Positions 16,914 through 26,271 are shown, numbered from the whole stretch's first letter. The stretch: 63,779 nt of DNA, filler included, from Guillardia theta CCMP2712 (GCF_000315625.1; 7 parts of 7 records of this genome joined end to end with filler, not necessarily neighbours in it); one strand, 5' to 3'. The notes: generated from the letters alone by a model not told the origin. Numbers and translations are program-made.

Positions 16914-17153
16914 NNNNNNNNNNNNNNNNNNNNNNNNNNNNNNNNNNNNNNNNNNNNATTGGTACTGTTGGTACAATATTTGCTACCAGGAAGTACCCTA
17001 CCGCCTTAAAAGGTCCCAACCAATTTGAATCAGCTCCCAGCCGTCTGACCCACCCCAGACCCCAACTGCCATTTGCTATTCACATGTGTGGAAGGATACC
17101 CCCACAGAAAACTATTGGAAACCAGAGGGGTCAGTTGAGAGCGACAACGCTAT

Positions 17154-18444
17154 GCCGCCCGGAGAGATCAGGCCCCCGGCCAATCTCCGGACACTTAGCC
17201 TCCTGGCGGGCCTCCAGGGGGTCTGAGGCGGGGCTGAAGGCTGCAGTCGGTCTACTGACGGGCCCGGCCGGCAGGATCCGTCGAGAAACAGGGGGGTCAA
17301 GGGAGGTTTTCTTCCCCCTGGGAGAAATGTCCTATGGGTTTTTGGATCTGCGATATAAAAAAGTCTTGTCTCGGTCACGTGATGTGTCACGTGACCGGAC
17401 GGGTGAGCCTGTCAGCCGGGGTCACGGCCCCTGTCAGCCGGCTGACATGTCACGGGGCCTGCTGACACGGTCCGCTGACCGGTCACGGCCGCCCGGAGAG
17501 ATCAGGCCCCCGGCCAATCTCCGGACACTTAGCCTCCTGGCGGGCCTCCAGGGGGTCTGAGGCGGGGCTGAAGGCTGCAGTCGGTCTACTGACGGGCCCG
17601 GCCGGCAGGATCCGTCGAGAAACAGGGGGGTCAAGGGAGGTTTTCTTTCCCCCTGGGAGAAATGTCCTATGGGTTTTTGGATCTGCGATATAAAAAAGTC
17701 TTGTCTCGGTCACGTGATGTGTCACGTGACCGGTCAGGTGAGCCTGTCAGCCGGGTCACGGCCCCTGTCAGCCGGCTGACATGTCACGGGCCTGCTGACA
17801 CGGTCCGCTGACCGGTCACGGCCGCCCGGAGAGATCAGGCCCCCGGCCAATCTCCGGACACTTAGCCTCCTGGCGGGCCTCCAGGGGGTCTGAGGCGGGG
17901 CTGAAGGCTGCAGTCGGTCTACTGACGGGCCCGGCCGGCAGGATCCGTCGAGAAACAGGGGGGTCAAGGGAGGTTTTCTTCCCCCTGGGAGAAATGTCCT
18001 ATGGGTTTTTGGATCTGCGATATAAAAAAGTCTTGTCTCGGTCACGTGATGTGTCACGTGACCGGTCAGGTGAGCCTGTCAGCCGGGTCACGGCCCCTGT
18101 CAGCCGGCTGACATGTCACGGGCCTGCTGACACGGTCCGCTGACCGGTCACGGCCGCCCGGAGAGATCAGGCCCCCGGCCAATCTCCGGACACTTAGCCT
18201 CCTGGCGGGCCTCCAGGGGGTCTGAGGCGGGGCTGAAGGCTGCAGTCGGTCTACTGACGGGCCCGGCCGGCAGGATCCGTCGAGAAACAGGGGGGTCAAG
18301 GGAGGTTTTCTTCCCCCTGGGAGAAATGTCCTATGGGTTTTTGGATCTGCGATATAAAAAAGTCTTGTCTCGGTCACGTGATGTGTCACGTGACCGGTCA
18401 GGTGAGCCTGTCAGCCGGGTCACGGCCCCTGTCAGCCGGCTGAC
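17154..18444. repeat. 332-bp GC-rich tandem satellite, left block (about 3.9 units)
   Basis: Identical spurious ORFs recur at 332-bp spacing (17734 and 18066). Confidence 0.95.
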
Positions 18445-19486
18445 ATAGCGTTGCCGTTCCGTATCCTTGTCGGATCAGTTAACCAGGGTGGTTCTCATAG
18501 TAGTTTTAGTCAAATTCAAGCGGCAAGAGAAAATTGACCTAAAAATGTTGGCTCCGTCAATTTATGTACCTTTTTCGTTGCCAGGGCTGCCGGGCCATCC
18601 AAGACAAGAAGGGCAATGTTGAGCAAAACCTTCCTCTATTTGATATGAATAGGCGTGTATAGTTGACTAAATAATCATGAGGAGGCTCGGGGTAGGTATT
18701 CAAATGATTTGAATCTTTCCAACGGCCTCCAGCCCGTGTTGAGGGGTAGGGGGTAGTGCAAACTTCTCGTATCAATCTAAAACACTTGTAAACGACCTCA
18801 CACTTGCCCCGTCTCTTCCCTATCCCACTACTCCCAATGTACTCAGGGACTGTTTGCTCAGCTGCTGAGCGCAGTCAAGGACCATGGCCCCTCAATGCTA
18901 ACTCCTGAAACTGCCAGGCAAGTACTGAGATCAAACAGCTCAATTCTTGGCTGAGAATCACACCTATAGTAGGTTGAGGGTGTTGCATCTCATCGAAATT
19001 TGCACTTGCGTACCAAAGCACTCATCAGCTATAGGTGATGGTTGTTCACTTCCAGAAGAAGGGAAACATGAAGGGAACCGATCAGAGAAGCAACCTTCGA
19101 AGACATGAAGGAAATTCGATTCTCCTTGTTGTGTTGACGCCCTAGCTTCCTTTACCTGAATGCTTCGTCGGTTGAAAAAGAAACACATTTCAAGAGACTT
19201 CCTGTTGCTTTGCCATGATTGCGTTTTTTGAGGCTTCTCCCAACCTATTGTAATATGGCGGTGTCATTTGTGAGGAGGTGAGGAGTTTGAGAGGCTGGGG
19301 GAAGGAGAGGGGAGGGGTTGGAAGGGAAATGGACGCCTGGGAGGCCAGGCTAGTTGATATGCCTGATCGCTGCGAGAGGAGATGCCGGAGGAGAGACCGT
19401 GTTTACTCAAGACCACTAGCGAGGAAGGCAGGAGGGCGAGGAGGACATGAGAGGAGAGGAAGGAGAAAGCTACGGGTAGAGACGGT

Positions 19487-20395
19487 TTACTTGACAGCAC
19501 TAATGAGGAAGGGATGCTTCAGAGCCTCCAGTGCTGTAATCCTCGTGCGGGGATCGATGTTGAGGCAGCAGTTGAGGAAGTCCCAGATCGCATGTTTCTC
19601 ATCCACCTCCAGCCAGTCCTTGCATCCCGCATGCGCGCCCAGGGAGCTTGACAAGGTCCGCCATGTTTGCTTGAAACCGCGGGCATAGCTGAGATGCAGT
19701 TCCAATGGTGGAATCTGAATGACATCAAGTTAGCAACCTCAGGCCTCCCGCCACCATATCATCCTCATCCTCATCCTCTTGATACAACAACGCCGACGAC
19801 AACAATTTTACCTTAACGTCGAGGAGCTTCCACACAGCATCCATGCTCTTGATGTACATGCGCAAGCTGCTCAGACAGTCAGACAAGCGCACTTCCAAGG
19901 TACACAAAGAGCGTACCCGTAGATCTCCATCGTTGCCGTGACTATGTCGTTATACTGGAACCATTGGAACTGTGTCGTGCGGCACAGCAGGGTAAGCAGT
20001 ACTACCCCAGCAGCCCACACGTCCACTGCTGTGGTCTGGCACTGCATGCCCATGAGCACTTCGGGCGCTCGGTATCCCCGAGTTCCCGCGCGTTTGACTG
20101 GACGTTCGAATTTGACCCCTGAGTTCCTCACTGTCACCGATGCGTTCGTCTTGCTGACGCCCAACATGATCCGCCTCTTCGCCATCTGCTGCGCCATCTC
20201 TAGCTTCTCCTGCTCCTTTTGATTCCGCGAGGAGCGAGAGCTGGCCGTAGAAACCTCACAGGGCAAGATGTTGCCGATGCTGCGGCCTGATGACTGCATT
20301 TGTTTCTCTGCCAGCCCAAAGTCCACAAGCAAGTACTTCTTATTCCTTCTGTCGTAGAGGAAGTTATTCAATTTCACGTCTCGATGTATAATAAA
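19487..20395 (-). CDS. CDC7: CDC7-like Ser/Thr kinase, C-lobe only (probably a 5'-truncated gene or pseudogene)
   Basis: IIHRDVKLNNFLYDRRNKKYLLVDFGLAE, a long insert, RAGTRGYRAPEVL..CQTTAVDVWAAGVVLL, and LNIDPRTRITALEALKHPF. No Gly-rich loop or VAxK found upstream. Confidence 0.75.
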
Positions 20396-21192
20396 TGTAT
20401 AATGTATAAGACAGTTCTTGCTCAAGACCGAGTTTAATGCACACTGTGACACGAAACCACTGAGAATTGAGGCAGCACTGCACATGAGAGACTCCCGACT
20501 GTATGCTAGAATATGAAACAGGCTCAAACTTAACTTTGAGTAAAGCTCAAGCATCATTGCAACGCCGCCGCTGTTCCGATGACACGGACCGGGTACGGCC
20601 CGGTACCGCCGGGCATTGCCGCCGCGTGGGGCCGCCCGGCCTGGCTCGGAACTTGACTCTCACCGTTCAACGGTTGACTCACCGGCTACGGTAGCCTTGA
20701 AGCCTCAGAGGTCCCGGAGAGTCCGGCTCGCCCGGCCGGGCGGCGGTCGCCGGGACCTTGAGTTTTCAGCCTGTGTTCAATTAACTCAGCGGGGCTATCT
20801 GATCGGACTGGCCGCATGGCTGGCATGCTGATCCCGGCATTAATCAGCAGTGCCGACGGTCGGACCGTCTCACTGAGCCTCCGCCGGGCCGGGCGGCGGC
20901 GGCGGCGGCGGCGGCGCCGGGCGGAGCCCGAGCCTGGCAGTCACTCAGCGGCTGAGTCACTGTGCCGCGCCAGCCCGGGGCTGACTCAGTGACTCGGCCT
21001 TGGAACCGTCACGGTGCCTGCTTGCCAGCGCCGGGGCGGCCCCGGGTACTCAGGGTAGCCTGAGTCACAACTTGAACAGTCGGAGGTCAACATAACTTAA
21101 CATAACATGGCATGCCAGGCTTCAGTCGGAACTTCGGAACTTGGAACACTCAGTGCGCCCGAAATGATTCAGGGCCACAAAAAATATTTCAC

Positions 21193-22150
21193 TGTGGAAC
21201 AACTTGAAAATTGAGGGGGTGTTCGGCCTGAAATCTACATGGAACAACTTGAAAATTGAGGGGGTGTATCGCCGCCGATAAGTTCTTGGAGACGGCGAGA
21301 AGTTCAGGGTATTGCGTCTCATTGGTAGACGAAGCTCAGCGACTCAGATGGAAGTGGGCTTTGACATAGGTCTGGAATTAAGTCGGAATCGACGAGCCTG
21401 AGGGTCCCGGCAGTGAAAAGGGGGTGCCACGGTGAGGAGGACACGTGTCCAGGGCGCTGTGCATTGTACTTGCCGTCACTGGAGTCACGGTGCCAGCCTT
21501 GCAAGGGACTGAAGGGGAGGTGACTGCTGTGAATAAAGGAAGTGTTGGTGGTGTTGTGTGGTTCTTCTGAGAGTTCTATCATCATCAGTGAAGGTGTTAG
21601 AGACTGCACAGCTGTGTATCGTATATAGTTTGGAGCAAGTCCAACCTACATGGAACAACTTGAAAATTGAGGGGGTGTTCGGCCTGAAATCATTGTGTGT
21701 CACGCTCCTGCGGCCTGAAATCATTGTGTGTCACGCTCCTCCAAGTTTCAAGTTGTTCCATATAGTTTGGAGCAAGTCCAAGTTGTTCCATATAGTTTGG
21801 AGCAAGTCCAACCTACATGGAACAACTTGAAAATTGAGGGGGTGTTCAGCCTGAAATCATTGTGTGTCACGCTCCTCCAAGTTTCAAGTTGTTCCATATA
21901 GTTTGGAGCAAGTCCAACCTACATGGAACAACTTGAAAATTGAGGAGGTGTTCGGCCTGAAATCATTGTGTGTCACGCTCCTGCGGCCTGAAATCATTGT
22001 GTGTCACGCTCCTCCAAGTTTCAAGTTGTTCCATATAGTTTGGAGCAAGTCCAACCTACATGGAACAACTTGAAAATTGAGGAGGTGTTCGGCCTGAAAT
22101 CATTGTGTGTCACGCTCCTGCGGCCTGAAATCTTTGTGTGTCACGCTCCC
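21193..22150. repeat. About 137-bp tandem array with internal inverted repeats (ATGGAACAACTTGAAA / TTTCAAGTTGTTCCAT)
   Basis: Main array 21622-22150 plus partial units at 21193-21267. Confidence 0.9.
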
Positions 22151-24782
22151 ATGCCATCGCAAGTCAGCTTTGATGGCCATTATGGCCTTCACAGGCGTGG
22201 CTGGCCCTCCGAAGCTCAATCATGATGCATCGCCAATACGATATCAAATATCAAAATAAAAAATATCAATGTTGAAAGTTTCCCGCCACTGTGAACTCTG
22301 CGAAGCCGTACAGATATGAGGATGTGCAGCGTTTGACAGAGCAAGACAAGTCAGGTGAGCATTATCTCTTTTTTTCATCGAAATTATCACGGGAAGAGAT
22401 CCAAATGACGTGTTCTTGATGCAGGTTGGAATGATTTGCAGCCTTTGGCAACTTGTATGAGATTGATGAACGGGTGAAGACTTTGGCAAGTGCCCAACCA
22501 ATATTACAAACCGGTATCCAGGAGTACGTAGACGTACCAGTAAGCCGCCCAGCATACAAAACTCTCGAGACAATGGCTGCATACGAAGGGGTTTTCGACA
22601 CATCGCAGAACTGTCCCGATGTGAAAAGGTTGTGACATGAAATGGGCACAAACAAAGATAAGTTCAGGACTCGGGAGTCGATCAGGTCTAGGCAAAATAT
22701 TGACATGGTCATCTCACTGCATGGAAGAACATGCAAAACTGAAGGAAAAGCTCAACGGAAAGTTCTAAATGAACAGATACAGCGCATTTTAGCAGTCACG
22801 GTCGGAGCAGCTCGATGCTTGAAACAAAGATGATCCTCAGTACAATCGAATGATGACAAGTAAGTCCCGTGGTTCGTGAAGGATTCTTCATCCAATTCTT
22901 AAGGATGTGTTGGAACGATGAAACATTTTGCAAATCACCAATTTCATCACACTGACTGATGCATCATGTAAATATTACTGGTGTGAACTTGCATCAGATT
23001 CTGTTCATCGGATGAGCCGCTACCAAGCAGTTGATGTCACAGCAAACAAGAGAGCCGTTTTGAAGATGTTGATATTCCTGACCGTAGAGCATTCAAGATG
23101 TGGCCACATGTCACATGCTTCTTGGTTAACGCAGATACACCCTCGCCAGGCAAAAGATGGAACGTCTTCAGGATTACAGGGAGGTCGGTTGTGCTTGTAC
23201 CCTGATTGTAACTCTTCTAATAAAGATATGATAACCTGAATGTGCAATTCTGTTTGTTGATTCACAGTGTTTGCGACTCGATTGCAATCATCGAGTGCTT
23301 GCTCTGTTGAACAAGGCACTCCTCTGTAGAGCCATGCGACAAGAACACTACAGTTGCACGGTAGCATTGCGACACCAAGACAGGATTGATCCGATGAACG
23401 TCTCATTTATTGATACGCAAAGGCATCACCTGCACATTGCTTCATTTCTGACTAGGTTTCTGTGCAATCGAAATCCTTGTGAAAATATCATGACAGAGGA
23501 AAAATTTGAAGCGAAACGGAAAAATCATCGAAATATGATCATAGATATAGTGATTCATGATCAACAACGGTTCTCTACAGTCATCTATGCGGGCAGGAAC
23601 AGTCATCTTCTGTGCAAACGTCTCTTCATGTATCGTTGAACGGTTGAGTGCATGTAAGACTTGCCTCCATAGAAAGGTGAAGTGCATGAATCCTGACTGT
23701 AAGACTAGAAGAATTGAAAGCAAGTGATGACATGAGAACACATATCTAGACAGAAAAGTCGCTCAAGGTACAGCTGGATACAAATTTCTCACAAATCACA
23801 GTCATGCATTTGAGCGCAACGTGCAACCTACGGCAATTTGAATAAAGGGTCAATCAGAGTTGATTCTGTTCAATGGTGTATCGATTATCAATTCCTTACC
23901 TGATCATAAAAATTTCATCTTGTCTTCGAAGAATATTTGCAAGTACACCCGCGGATTGTTTGTACCTAGGGTGCTTATTCCAGTACACGATGGATGATTC
24001 AAACCTTGGCCCAACCTGTAGAGTTGAGAAAGAAGCTCGATCATCTCTTACAGGTATGATATGAGATCTTCATCTCATTTCTATCTCAGTTGGGTTGGAT
24101 TCAAAGTCTCTCAATATCAAAGTTCATCCTGGTGAGTCAGGAAGGCACCATTTCATCGCTTCTTGCTCGTCCAGGGAGAGGGGGCTTGGGGAATGAGAAA
24201 TGGGTGTTACCCCCACCCCCTATTGTAGAGTTTCAAACTGTTTCAAAGGTGGGTAGTTGAGGGTGCTCCATACCCACCCCACCACCCAAAATGACTCAAA
24301 CGGAGGGGTTCTCGGATCCGAAGGAATCCCGCCTCCATCACCCCCTCTCATTTGAATTCAAGATGGTTCAGGCCGACCCCACATACAGGCTTGCAGTTTT
24401 CTTATGTATGCCCATATGATTTGATCGGACAGGCCCCAGGTTCAAGGGATGAAGCAATTCACCAGCATGCTTGAAGATTTTTCATGGGAGTGGGGTTATA
24501 CTTGTACCGGATGTGTACAATACATAGGGGAGAACCCCGAATGGTACCAAAAGAGTACCAAAGTCACATGGTTCGGACTGTACTAACTGGTACCAAGAAA
24601 TTGTACTCAAGAAGACATAGCCCTGAAAAAGTTCTGCTTGGCTCTTCGTGATTTGAATTCGGAACACGGTCGGAAGACCCACCCCGCCCCCACATGAGGC
24701 GTGGTATGCGTGGATTTGAATCTACCACCCTCACCGCGAAACGTTTTAGAGCTCCAAGGTCAATTGAGAAAGGCAACGCTAT

Positions 24783-25559
24783 GACATGTCACGGGCCTGC
24801 TGACACGGTCCGCTGACCGGTCACGGCCGCCCGGAGAGATCAGGCCCCCGGCCAATCTCCGGACACTTAGCCTCCTGGCGGGCCTCCAGGGGGTCTGAGG
24901 CGGGGCTGAAGGCTGCAGTCGGTCTACTGACGGGCCCGGCCGGCAGGATCCGTCGAGAAACAGGGGGGTCAAGGGAGGTTTTCTTCCCCCTGGGAGAAAT
25001 GTCCTATGGGTTTTTGGATCTGCGATATAAAAAAGTCTTGTCTCGGTCACGTGATGTGTCACGTGACCGGTCAGGTGAGCCTGTCAGCCGGGTCACGGCC
25101 CCTGTCAGCCGGCTGACATGTCACGGGCCTGCTGACACGGTCCGCTGACCGGTCACGGCCGCCCGGAGAGATCAGGCCCCCGGCCAATCTCCGGACACTT
25201 AGCCTCCTGGCGGGCCTCCAGGGGGTCTGAGGCGGGGCTGAAGGCTGCAGTCGGTCTACTGACGGGCCCGGCCGGCAGGATCCGTCGAGAAACAGGGGGG
25301 TCAAGGGAGGTTTTCTTCCCCCTGGGAGAAATGTCCTATGGGTTTTTGGATCTGCGATATAAAAAAGTCTTGTCTCGGTCACGTGATGTGTCACGTGACC
25401 GGTCAGGTGAGCCTGTCAGCCGGGTCACGGCCCCTGTCAGCCGGCTGACATGTCACGGGCCTGCTGACACGGTCCGCTGACCGGTCACGGCCGCCCGGAG
25501 AGATCAGGCCCCCGGCCAATCTCCGGACACTTAGCCTCCTGGCGGGCCTCCAGGGGGTC
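24783..25559. repeat. 332-bp GC-rich tandem satellite, right block (about 2.3 units)
   Basis: Same unit and orientation as 17154-18444. Confidence 0.95.
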
Positions 25560-26271
25560 GTGTAGGGGGTGGCGTGGAGACCTGTTTCAAACGATTTCAA
25601 ACTGGTTTCGAAATTAAAGTTTATAAGTCGATTCTTGTTTCGGCCAAAACTATTTTAGTTTGTACTTGGGGATTGTTAAGTATAATCTGGGCAGCGACAG
25701 CCATGGCGGACCGCTCGGAGCATCGAGCATCAACAAGAAATGCAGCGCAATTGGGTGTGGCGAAAAGAAGGAAGATGGAAGCGAATGAAAATGATGCAAT
25801 TGANNNNNNNNNNNNNNNNNNNNNNNNNNNNNNNNNNNNNNNNNNNNTTAATTAATTAANNNNNNNNNNNNNNNNNNNNNNNNNNNNNNNNNNNNNNNNN
25901 NNNTGGTACGATCCCGCAGAAAACGACTTGAGGTGCATCTTGACTGATGTCTAGGCCCGTCCTCTAACTGACTCCTCTTCCTTTCTCTTCCTCCTCGTGT
26001 CAGGCTCTTCCTCCCTTGACCCGCTCCTCTTCGCTCCAGCCGCCTCCCTCCCCTCGCTCACTGACGGTGCTCGTTGATGAGTCCCAAGAATTCAAAAAGG
26101 CGTGCAAAACGCCGGGATCAACTCCTTTACTCAAAGTTAAGTTAAAAATCAATACGAGGACAATCAAGAAGGGGGAGAGGAGAGGAGGAGGGGGTGGAGG
26201 AGTGGGGGGAGGAAGAGGGGGAGAGGAGGAGCAGGGGGAGCAGGGGGAGCAGGAGGAGCAGGGGGAGCAGG

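What the first reader, a model, noticed from the sequence alone, without database searches (positions are those of the whole stretch)
18445..24782. 6.3-kb TIR element inserted in register into a 332-bp satellite
Seen: the satellite stops at ...GGCTGAC, then ATAGCGTTGCCGTTC begins. 6.3 kb later GAAAGGCAACGCTAT is followed by GACATGTCACG, the exact continuation of the satellite. The ends are inverted repeats (about 14 of 15 bp) with GAC duplicated; 1- or 5-bp readings of the TSD are formally possible. No transposase is recognisable inside. The cargo is a kinase fragment, a GC island, a MITE-like array and AT-rich gene-like DNA. Inference: a Pack-type non-autonomous DNA transposon whose termini do not fit CACTA, hAT, Tc1 or PIF signatures.
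Basis: partly seen in the sequence, partly recalled or inferred. Interest (0 to 1): 0.75.

Follow-up and report, generated by a model that had tools for sequence, protein, structure and literature searches.

The report
Kinase-carrying DNA transposon in Guillardia satellite
A 6.3-kb non-autonomous cut-and-paste transposon sits precisely inside a 332-bp tandem repeat of the alga Guillardia theta; it belongs to a recently multiplied family that carries half of a Cdc7-like kinase gene and the decayed start of a gene that may be a RAG1/Transib/CACTA-like transposase.

Summary
The piece is Guillardia theta CCMP2712 nuclear DNA. Removing 18445-24785 restores a perfect 332-bp array, with 0 mismatches over 1442 bp. 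The insert (18445-24782, 6338 bp) has 15-bp terminal inverted repeats matching 14/15. Its flanking duplication reads symmetrically as 3 bp (GAC, favoured), 5 bp (TGACA) or 1 bp.

A second, diverged right end of the same kind abuts the start of the array at 17153. It keeps two subterminal motifs at the same distances from the tip.

The cargo includes the C-lobe of a Cdc7-like kinase with its introns. At least 13 near-identical G. theta gene models on about ten scaffolds encode this fragment, so the family multiplied recently.

22222-22833(+) is a broken copy (two stops, two frameshifts) of the first ~150 codons of a cryptophyte gene. An 868-aa relative of that gene looks RAG1/Transib/EnSpm-like by language-model features and by its D..D..CxxC..HxnH..E layout. 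That link is not confirmed by Pfam, PDB or a usable fold.

The best reading is a non-autonomous TIR transposon, probably of the CACTA-Transib ("CMCT") clade, with atypical non-CAC ends. It is a new member of a known kind and of moderate interest.

The parts
16958..17153 (+). Right end of a second, diverged element of the same kind ('copy A'). Its terminal 15-mer is at 17139-17153 and it abuts the first satellite unit.
   Evidence: family D12: 17129-17154 vs 24758-24783, 85%. (collinear 62% match to the last 132 bp of the insert). (alignment). (GGGGTGGGT at 98 and 98, ATTCAAAT at 124 and 125 from the tip)..
17154..18444 (.). 332-bp tandem repeat, left part (3.9 units). The first two units are about 94% identical to the rest; the others are identical to each other.
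18442..18444 (.). Left copy of the target-site duplication GAC (3-bp reading). The 5-bp reading is TGACA at 18441-18445.
18445..24782 (+). The inserted element, 6338 bp, 48.9% GC, in a 63.6% GC repeat.
18445..18459 (+). Left terminal inverted repeat ATAGCGTTGCCGTTC.
19487..20557 (-). Cdc7-like protein kinase C-lobe fragment (HRD to subdomain XI). Exons are about 20485-19917, 19866-19812 and 19714-19490, with the stop at 19487-19489. Two GT..AG introns are retained and there is no N-lobe.
   Evidence: Pkinase 1.4e-19, profile positions from about 122 on. (100% to GUITHDRAFT_99883). (no match to residues 1-143 of a full Cdc7). (exon coordinates).
20560..21060 (.). GC island (66-69% GC) with a (GGC)n run at 20892-20920, lying between the two divergently oriented gene remnants.
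21195..22150 (.). Array of foldback (MITE-like) units with periods 106/137 bp and a 31-bp sub-repeat.
   Evidence: unit 21869-21982 folds at -28.2 kcal/mol, z = -7.4.
22222..22833 (+). Decayed 5' remnant of a cryptophyte gene (relatives GUITHDRAFT_105445, an 868-aa ENA protein, and Hanusia phi). It has in-frame stops at 22273-22275 and 22633-22635, one intron (about 22356-22441) and two frameshifts near 22665 and 22742. It is a candidate transposase remnant.
   Evidence: 86%, 81% and 51% identity; E 5e-29, 4e-17, 4e-6. (tblastn E 5.6e-57 to P0131 residues 16-154). (frames).
22834..24100 (.). 41-45% GC DNA without recognisable relatives. It shows no homology to the rest of the 868-aa protein.
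24100..24767 (.). Right subterminal region with repeated short motifs (ATTCAAAT at 62, 125 and 426 and GGGGTGGGT at 98 and 503 from the tip, read inward).
24768..24782 (-). Right terminal inverted repeat (reverse complement ATAGCGTTGCCTTTC).
24783..24785 (.). Right copy of the target-site duplication GAC.
24786..25559 (.). 332-bp tandem repeat, right part, continuing in register.

Best explanation
The insert is a non-autonomous class II (cut-and-paste, TIR) DNA transposon of Guillardia theta, 6338 bp long. It integrated recently into one unit of a 332-bp GC-rich tandem repeat. Integration went through a staggered cut that was filled in to give a short duplication, most likely 3 bp (GAC).

The element cannot move itself. 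Its only transposase-like sequence is a broken 5' remnant, so it must be mobilised in trans by a related autonomous element. That enzyme would recognise the 15-bp termini and the short subterminal motifs.

Its interior holds a Cdc7-like kinase C-lobe fragment, copied at the DNA level with its introns. This fragment has been multiplied with the element to at least 13 near-identical loci.

The remnant's full-length relatives look like transposases of the CACTA/EnSpm-Mirage-Chapaev-Transib (CMCT, RAG1-related) clade. The family is therefore probably a cryptophyte branch of that clade with atypical, non-CAC ends.

Shown: the insertion, the TIRs, the duplication, a second terminus, the truncated kinase, multicopy cargo and a decayed gene remnant. 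Inferred: trans-mobilisation, that the remnant is the family's own transposase, and the CMCT assignment.
For: In-register insertion with perfect virtual excision. TIR 14/15 and a third terminus, against 0.28 expected by chance. Copy A shares the terminal 25 bp at 85% and two motifs at the same distance from the tip, although the rest has diverged to about 62-74%. Copy A has a different flank, which rules out a fixed attachment site. Pfam found no transposase domain in 30 stop-free segments. The kinase is C-lobe only. The fragment is found in GUITHDRAFT_99883/107905 (identical proteins), 111339, 105508, 107926, 117622, 116449, 107937, 103714/112657 plus one more (identical at three loci), 120534 and one unnamed model. 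A more distant paralogue with an N-lobe, GUITHDRAFT_75261 (69%), ends at the same exon boundary. The remnant at 22222-22833 matches P0131/P0132/P0133. P0132 residues 300-868 sit next to RAG1_RNase_H/ZnC2/ZnH2 clusters at 0.95-0.96, and 8 of the 10 best named hits agree. P0132 has D352 or D396, D464, C484-x2-C487, H764-x5-H770 and E794 in the order that defines the CMCT clade and RAG1 (motif definition and the 2-5 bp TSD range from PMC12730594).
Against: The termini do not start with CA/CAC, as most CMCT elements do. Pfam shows only coiled-coil noise for P0132: no RAG1, Transposase_21 or Plavaka model appears among its 25 best hits, so none scores better than E about 0.2. A PDB sequence search finds nothing relevant. 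The single-sequence AlphaFold model was unusable (pLDDT 35.7). The histidine pair is H-x5-H rather than the published H(3-4)H. The remnant is only 81-86% identical to its relatives while the kinase copies are 98-100% alike, so the remnant could be old debris or captured cargo rather than the family's own gene. Only two element ends besides this copy's own pair were seen.
Confidence: 0.72

Rival explanations
1. Strict Pack-type reading. The element belongs to an unidentified superfamily with 3-bp duplications. Both the kinase piece and the transposase-like remnant are merely captured or nested fragments of other loci. The true autonomous partner is unrelated to P0132.
For: The termini fit no named superfamily. 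The remnant is much more diverged (81-86%) than the kinase copies are from each other (98-100%). The remnant lies 3.8 kb and 2.0 kb from the ends, not next to a terminus. Two unrelated gene fragments in one element is the Pack pattern.
Against: The remnant includes the gene's start region and sits downstream of a GC island and repeat array, as an element's own gene would after internal deletion. A 3-bp duplication, a short TIR and subterminal motifs are what an EnSpm-like CMCT element would show.
Confidence: 0.2
2. Transib/RAG-like element proper. The duplication is 5 bp (TGACA), the ends are TAGCG..CGCTA, and the element is a deletion derivative of a Transib-type transposon that prefers GC-rich targets.
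For: The 5-bp reading is formally valid. Language-model features of P0132 point to RAG1 families. Transib is the superfamily with 5-bp duplications and a GC-rich target preference, and the target is 63.6% GC. A RAG-like transposon with asymmetric TIRs is known in the alga Aureococcus. Here the two ends also differ beyond base 15.
Against: The CAC of the heptamer is reported as perfectly conserved in Transib and RAG-like elements and is absent here. At copy A the base after ..CGCTA is T where the satellite has G, so a 5-bp duplication there needs an extra mutation. RAG1-like features are shared by the whole CMCT clade.
Confidence: 0.12
3. Composite or nested structure. The TIR-bounded shell is one element, and the multicopy kinase fragment belongs to a different repeat nested inside it. 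In that case the 13 kinase loci say nothing about this element's mobility.
For: Only proteins, not DNA, of the other loci could be seen. The interior is a mosaic of blocks with different composition.
Against: No internal TIR/TSD pair bounding the kinase block was found among the repeats. The kinase models all break off in the same region, as expected for one amplified unit.
Confidence: 0.08
4. Not a transposition. The alternatives are an assembly join of two satellite loci, filler DNA from double-strand-break repair, or site-specific integration at a TGACAT core.
For: Identical tandem units are hard to assemble. A 6-bp direct repeat TGACAT can be read at both junctions.
Against: A misjoin or filler would not give 14/15 inverted ends together with an exact in-register duplication. 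Copy A ends with the same terminus but has a different flank, so there is no fixed core.
Confidence: 0.02

Closest known systems
Pack-CACTA / Pack-MULE ('Pack-TYPE') transposons of plants
   Same: A non-autonomous TIR element with a short duplication. It has no working transposase, carries a host-gene fragment copied with its introns, and is mobilised in trans.
   Different: The termini are not CACTA or MULE-like. The host is a cryptophyte alga. The cargo-bearing family is amplified to at least 13 near-identical loci, more than I recall as usual for Pack elements (own knowledge, not checked here). It also holds a transposase-like remnant, so capture versus inheritance of the interior is unresolved.
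EnSpm/CACTA non-autonomous derivatives (dSpm-type) within the CMCT clade (PMC12730594)
   Same: A likely 3-bp duplication without sequence specificity, a short (about 15-bp) TIR, repeated subterminal motifs, and an internal remnant of a gene whose relatives have D-D-C(2)C-H(n)H-E.
   Different: The ends read ATAGCG..CGCTAT, not CAC..GTG. No Pfam Transposase_21/24 match was found. The histidine spacing is 5, not 3-4.
Transib / RAG-like transposons, including AanRAGL of the alga Aureococcus (PMC1131882, PMC9435367)
   Same: A GC-rich target, a possible 5-bp duplication, ends that differ beyond the first 15 bp, and RAG1-like features in the full-length relative.
   Different: There is no CAC heptamer and no RAG2-like gene was seen. 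The 3-bp reading is favoured by the second terminus.
Ac/Ds-type internal-deletion derivatives (as a mechanism, not a family)
   Same: Keeps the termini and the 5' part of the element's gene but has lost the catalytic part, so it depends on an autonomous relative.
   Different: hAT hallmarks (8-bp duplication, hAT dimerisation domain) are absent.

Membership tests
Class II TIR (cut-and-paste) transposon | Terminal inverted repeats at both ends | tested here: met
   14/15 match.
Class II TIR (cut-and-paste) transposon | Target-site duplication, with an empty site that lacks the element | tested here: met
   GAC is duplicated. Five intact paralogous units serve as empty sites. Virtual excision gives 0 mismatches.
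Class II TIR (cut-and-paste) transposon | Further copies with the same termini in different flanks | tested here: inconclusive
   One more right terminus with another flank was found.
Pack-type (gene-fragment-carrying non-autonomous) transposon | No functional transposase | tested here: met
   No transposase domain in 30 segments. The only candidate is a remnant with two stops and two frameshifts.
Pack-type (gene-fragment-carrying non-autonomous) transposon | Fragment of a cellular gene inside, with a fuller paralogue elsewhere | tested here: met
   Cdc7-like C-lobe only. GUITHDRAFT_75261 has the N-lobe, is 69% identical and shares an exon boundary.
Pack-type (gene-fragment-carrying non-autonomous) transposon | Fragment acquired by the element rather than inherited from its autonomous ancestor | not testable with these tools
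   This needs the autonomous element's sequence.
EnSpm/CACTA | 3-bp target-site duplication | tested here: inconclusive
   3 bp is one of three symmetric readings. It is favoured by copy A's junction base.
EnSpm/CACTA | Termini CACTA.. / CA..TG | tested here: not met
   The ends are ATAGCG..CGCTAT. CA..TG appears only under the 1-bp reading.
EnSpm/CACTA | Subterminal repeats | tested here: inconclusive
   ATTCAAAT occurs three times and GGGGTGGGT twice near the right end, one ATTCAAAT pair near the left end, and the same positions hold in copy A. No statistics were computed.
CMCT clade (EnSpm-Mirage-Chapaev-Transib, RAG1) | [quoted passage not shown] | tested here: inconclusive
   P0132 has D464, C484-x2-C487, H764-x5-H770 and E794, and Atlas features next to RAG1 families. 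Pfam, PDB and fold give no support. The protein is a relative of the remnant, not encoded in the window.
CMCT clade (EnSpm-Mirage-Chapaev-Transib, RAG1) | 2-5 bp duplication | tested here: met
   Either 3 or 5 bp falls in the range (range). The 1-bp reading would not.
Transib | 5-bp duplication | tested here: inconclusive
   TGACA is possible but is disfavoured by copy A.
Transib | TIR starting with the CAC heptamer | tested here: not met
   Under the 5-bp reading the ends start TAG (criterion).
PIF/Harbinger | 3-bp TWA duplication and DDE_Tnp_4 transposase | tested here: not met
   The duplication is GAC and no such domain was found.
hAT | 8-bp duplication | tested here: not met
   The longest possible direct repeat is 6 bp.
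Tc1/mariner | TA duplication | tested here: not met
   The target GGCTGACATGTC contains no TA dinucleotide, and no parse of the junctions gives a TA duplication.
Polinton-like virus derivative | TIRs of hundreds of bp, 5-6 bp duplication, capsid/ATPase genes | tested here: not met
   The TIR is 15 bp and no viral domains were found (criteria).

The most novel reading that the evidence does not exclude
Cryptophytes harbour a so-far undescribed, recently active branch of the RAG1-related CMCT transposon clade. Its ends have lost the otherwise near-universal CA/CAC start. It has picked up and multiplied half a Cdc7 kinase gene, and it inserts preferentially into a GC-rich 332-bp satellite: both termini whose outer flank lies within this piece abut that satellite.
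Probability: 0.22. Interest if true: 0.6.

Novelty: new member of a known kind. Interest (0 to 1): 0.38.

Why it matters
There are three reasons.

1. At least 13 G. theta reference proteins are N-lobe-less cargo of one repeat family, yet several carry database names such as 'non-specific serine/threonine protein kinase'. Kinome and gene-family counts for this model cryptophyte are inflated accordingly.

2. The near-identity of the copies (identical proteins at two and at three loci) points to a DNA transposon family active very recently in a lineage whose class II elements are hardly described. No paper in the searchable library mentions Transib together with Guillardia.

3. If the 868-aa relative is confirmed as RAG1/Transib/EnSpm-like, cryptophytes add a unicellular lineage with unusual termini to the history of RAG-related transposases. 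That would sit beside the Aureococcus RAG-like element.

The clean empty and occupied sites in one array also make this locus a convenient PCR marker for excision or insertion polymorphism.

Tried and rejected
No earlier notes and no G. theta contigs could be read, so termini and flanks of other copies could not be tabulated.
- Metagenome scan with a 22-base degenerate terminus pattern: 7 hits, all chance, with no similarity beyond the pattern.
- Viral-contig scan with P0132: nothing.
- Rfam and tRNA scans: nothing.
- Word search with the minus-strand ORF 23023-23406 and with the satellite ORF: no relatives.
- Structure of P0132: the single-sequence AlphaFold model had pLDDT 35.7, too poor for a fold search, so none was run.
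- PDB sequence search: only coiled-coil noise.
- Pfam on the two repetitive distant hits P0134-P0136: uninformative.
- Weak tblastn hits of later P0132 residues to 23043-23468 (E 1-6, about 35%): rejected as noise, because the genuine remnant is 81-86% identical.
- Site-specific integration at a TGACAT core: rejected, because copy A has another flank.
- Flanks or interior as degenerate satellite: rejected.
- Bacterial promoter/terminator scan: not meaningful for a eukaryote.
- CACAATG inside the 31-bp sub-repeat of the hairpin array: judged chance level, since about 0.8 occurrences are expected in the element (my estimate).
- Spliced models: exons were searched one by one by reference.


Full report
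ORIGIN. The 228-aa ORF at 19874-20557(-) is 100% identical to a predicted protein of Guillardia theta CCMP2712, GUITHDRAFT_99883. The piece is therefore nuclear DNA of this cryptophyte alga. Introns are short, with GT..AG borders.

- A 332-bp tandem repeat occupies 17154-18446 and 24782-25559.
- The left junction is ..GGCTGAC|ATAGCGTTGCCGTTC and the right one ..GGCAACGCTAT|GACATGTCACG. The uninterrupted motif GGCTGACATGTCACG occurs in five intact units.
- Cutting out 18445-24785 restores an array with no mismatch at a 332-bp shift over 1442 bp. Cuts longer or shorter by 1-3 bases give more than 230 mismatches.
- The ends are inverted repeats matching 14 of 15.
- The 15-mer with up to three mismatches is found four times, against 0.28 expected. 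These are the two ends, a third terminus at 17139-17153, and one probable chance match at 25737-25751.
- Three symmetric parses exist: 1 bp (A), 3 bp (GAC) and 5 bp (TGACA). The longest direct repeat at the junctions is 6 bp, TGACAT.

A SECOND TERMINUS.
- The 196 bp left of the array (16958-17153) are a diverged right end of a related element.
- The last 26 bp match at 85%. The last about 130 bp align collinearly at about 62% (alignment).
- Two short motifs sit at the same distance from the tip in both ends: GGGGTGGGT at 98 and 98, ATTCAAAT at 125 and 124.
- This end is followed by a different phase of the satellite (..CGCTAT|GCCGCCCGG). There is therefore no fixed attachment core, and the family has inserted next to or into this repeat twice.
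- The satellite has G where copy A has the final T. That T therefore belongs to the element, which favours the 3-bp (or 1-bp) over the 5-bp parse. The argument assumes that copy A also sits inside the array, and the piece's edge hides that.

CONTENT OF THE INSERT.
1. Kinase fragment. On the minus strand at 20557-19487 lies the C-terminal half of a Cdc7-like kinase: HRD, DFG, a kinase insert, APE and subdomain XI. Pfam Pkinase scores 1.4e-19 and the match starts around profile position 122. A full-length insect Cdc7 aligns only from its residue 144 on, and nothing in the piece matches the N-lobe. Two introns are retained. A more distant G. theta paralogue with an N-lobe (GUITHDRAFT_75261, 69% identical) ends at the same exon border. 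The fragment was therefore copied as DNA.
2. GC island at 20560-21060 (up to 69% GC).
3. Foldback array at 21195-22150. One unit folds at -28.2 kcal/mol, z = -7.4.
4. Gene remnant at 22222-22833(+), the broken start of another gene (described below).
5. About 1.3 kb with no relatives.
6. A right subterminal region with the repeated motifs.

Thirty stop-free segments gave no transposase domain in Pfam.

THE CARGO IS MULTICOPY AND YOUNG. The 90% clusters around the kinase fragment hold G. theta models on about ten scaffolds:
- GUITHDRAFT_99883 and 107905, which are identical proteins
- 111339, 105508, 107926, 117622, 116449 and one unnamed model
- 107937
- 103714, 112657 and one more, identical at three loci
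- 120534

Within the first group the proteins differ by 0-1 residue. The second group differs by a few residues and a 20-residue indel. None has an N-lobe. This is strong indirect evidence that the unit carrying the fragment multiplied recently.

THE GENE REMNANT.
- The 66-aa exon at 22435-22632 was scored against 1.84 billion representatives. It hit GUITHDRAFT_105445 (265 aa, 86%), an 868-aa protein from an ENA contig (81%) and a Hanusia phi protein (51%).
- tblastn places residues 16-154 of the G. theta protein on 22291-22788 (E 5.6e-57).
- The window copy has stops at 22273-22275 and 22633-22635 and two frameshifts near 22665 and 22742. Nothing after about residue 150 is present.
- For the 868-aa protein, Pfam shows only coiled-coil noise and the PDB sequence search finds nothing.
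- The ESM Atlas places the whole protein, and more clearly residues 300-868, next to clusters carrying RAG1_RNase_H, RAG1_ZnC2 and RAG1_ZnH2, and next to unnamed cnidarian and arthropod clusters. Scores are 0.95-0.96 and 8 of the 10 best named hits share a family.
- The protein has, in order, D352 or D396, D464, C484-x2-C487, H764-x5-H770 and E794.
[quoted passage not shown] The elements of that clade make 2-5-bp duplications and mostly end CA..TG.
- My comparison with mouse RAG1 residue numbers is from memory and counts only as a lead.
- The single-sequence AlphaFold model was too poor to search (pLDDT 35.7).

INTERPRETATION. The element is a non-autonomous TIR transposon that inserted recently into an already homogeneous array. 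It is most simply read as a rearranged deletion derivative of a CMCT-type element. Supporting features are a short TIR, subterminal motifs, a likely 3-bp duplication as in EnSpm/CACTA, and a remnant of the family's gene. It also carries a kinase fragment in the manner of Pack-CACTA elements.

The ends, however, do not start with CA/CAC. That start is reported as invariant in Transib and RAG-like elements and usual in the clade. The remnant is also far more diverged than the kinase copies are from each other.

The alternatives therefore stay open: pure capture by an unknown superfamily, or a true Transib with a 5-bp duplication.

Other explanations do not fit. A Polinton-like virus derivative is excluded by the TIR length and the gene content. 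An assembly artefact or repair filler is excluded by the inverted ends combined with the exact duplication.

LIMITS. No other copy's termini could be inspected. The metagenome scan for the termini gave only chance hits, and the viral-contig scan with the 868-aa protein gave nothing. The transposase link rests on one kind of evidence plus a motif pattern.

Noticed in passing
window 25560-25803: The satellite stops abruptly in mid-unit at 25559. Unrelated DNA follows, containing GTTTCAAAC-type motifs and the start of an ORF (ATG at about 25705) that is cut off by the piece's edge. This may be another insertion or the true edge of the array.
   Followed up: partly
window 18436-18450 and every satellite unit: The insertion site lies in a perfect 10-bp palindrome, TGACATGTCA. 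Each 332-bp unit also holds two CACGTG boxes and many TGAC/GTCA motifs. The unit looks like a cluster of bZIP/bHLH-type binding sites.
   Followed up: no
window 20930-21075: The GC island contains three TGAGTCA/TGACTCA (AP-1/GCN4-like) palindromes and a (GGC)n run. It lies between the divergently oriented kinase fragment and gene remnant, like a bidirectional promoter.
   Followed up: no
window 21680-22149: The reverse complement of each 31-bp sub-repeat of the hairpin array contains CACAATG, the Transib heptamer. One such 7-mer per 6.3 kb is about what chance gives, and the inverted repeats do not extend to it.
   Followed up: partly
G. theta proteins P0001, P0002, P0119-P0128: At least 13 reference gene models, several named 'non-specific serine/threonine protein kinase' in UniRef, are near-identical N-lobe-less transposon cargo. 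Three of them (GUITHDRAFT_107905, 107926, 107937) appear to lie on one 687,544-bp scaffold.
   Followed up: partly
P0132 (868 aa, ENA contig of 4797 bp) and P0133 (Hanusia phi): A cryptophyte protein family with no Pfam domain has an N-terminal coiled coil and a C-terminal D..D..CxxC..HxnH..E region that language-model features place next to RAG1. No paper in the library links Transib to Guillardia.
   Followed up: partly
window 20380-20410 (minus strand): Just upstream of the HRD motif the kinase reading frame carries a short AT-rich duplication (TTATACA repeated). It lengthens the usual ..H..GIIHRD.. segment. The same oddity is present in the other copies (P0122).
   Followed up: no
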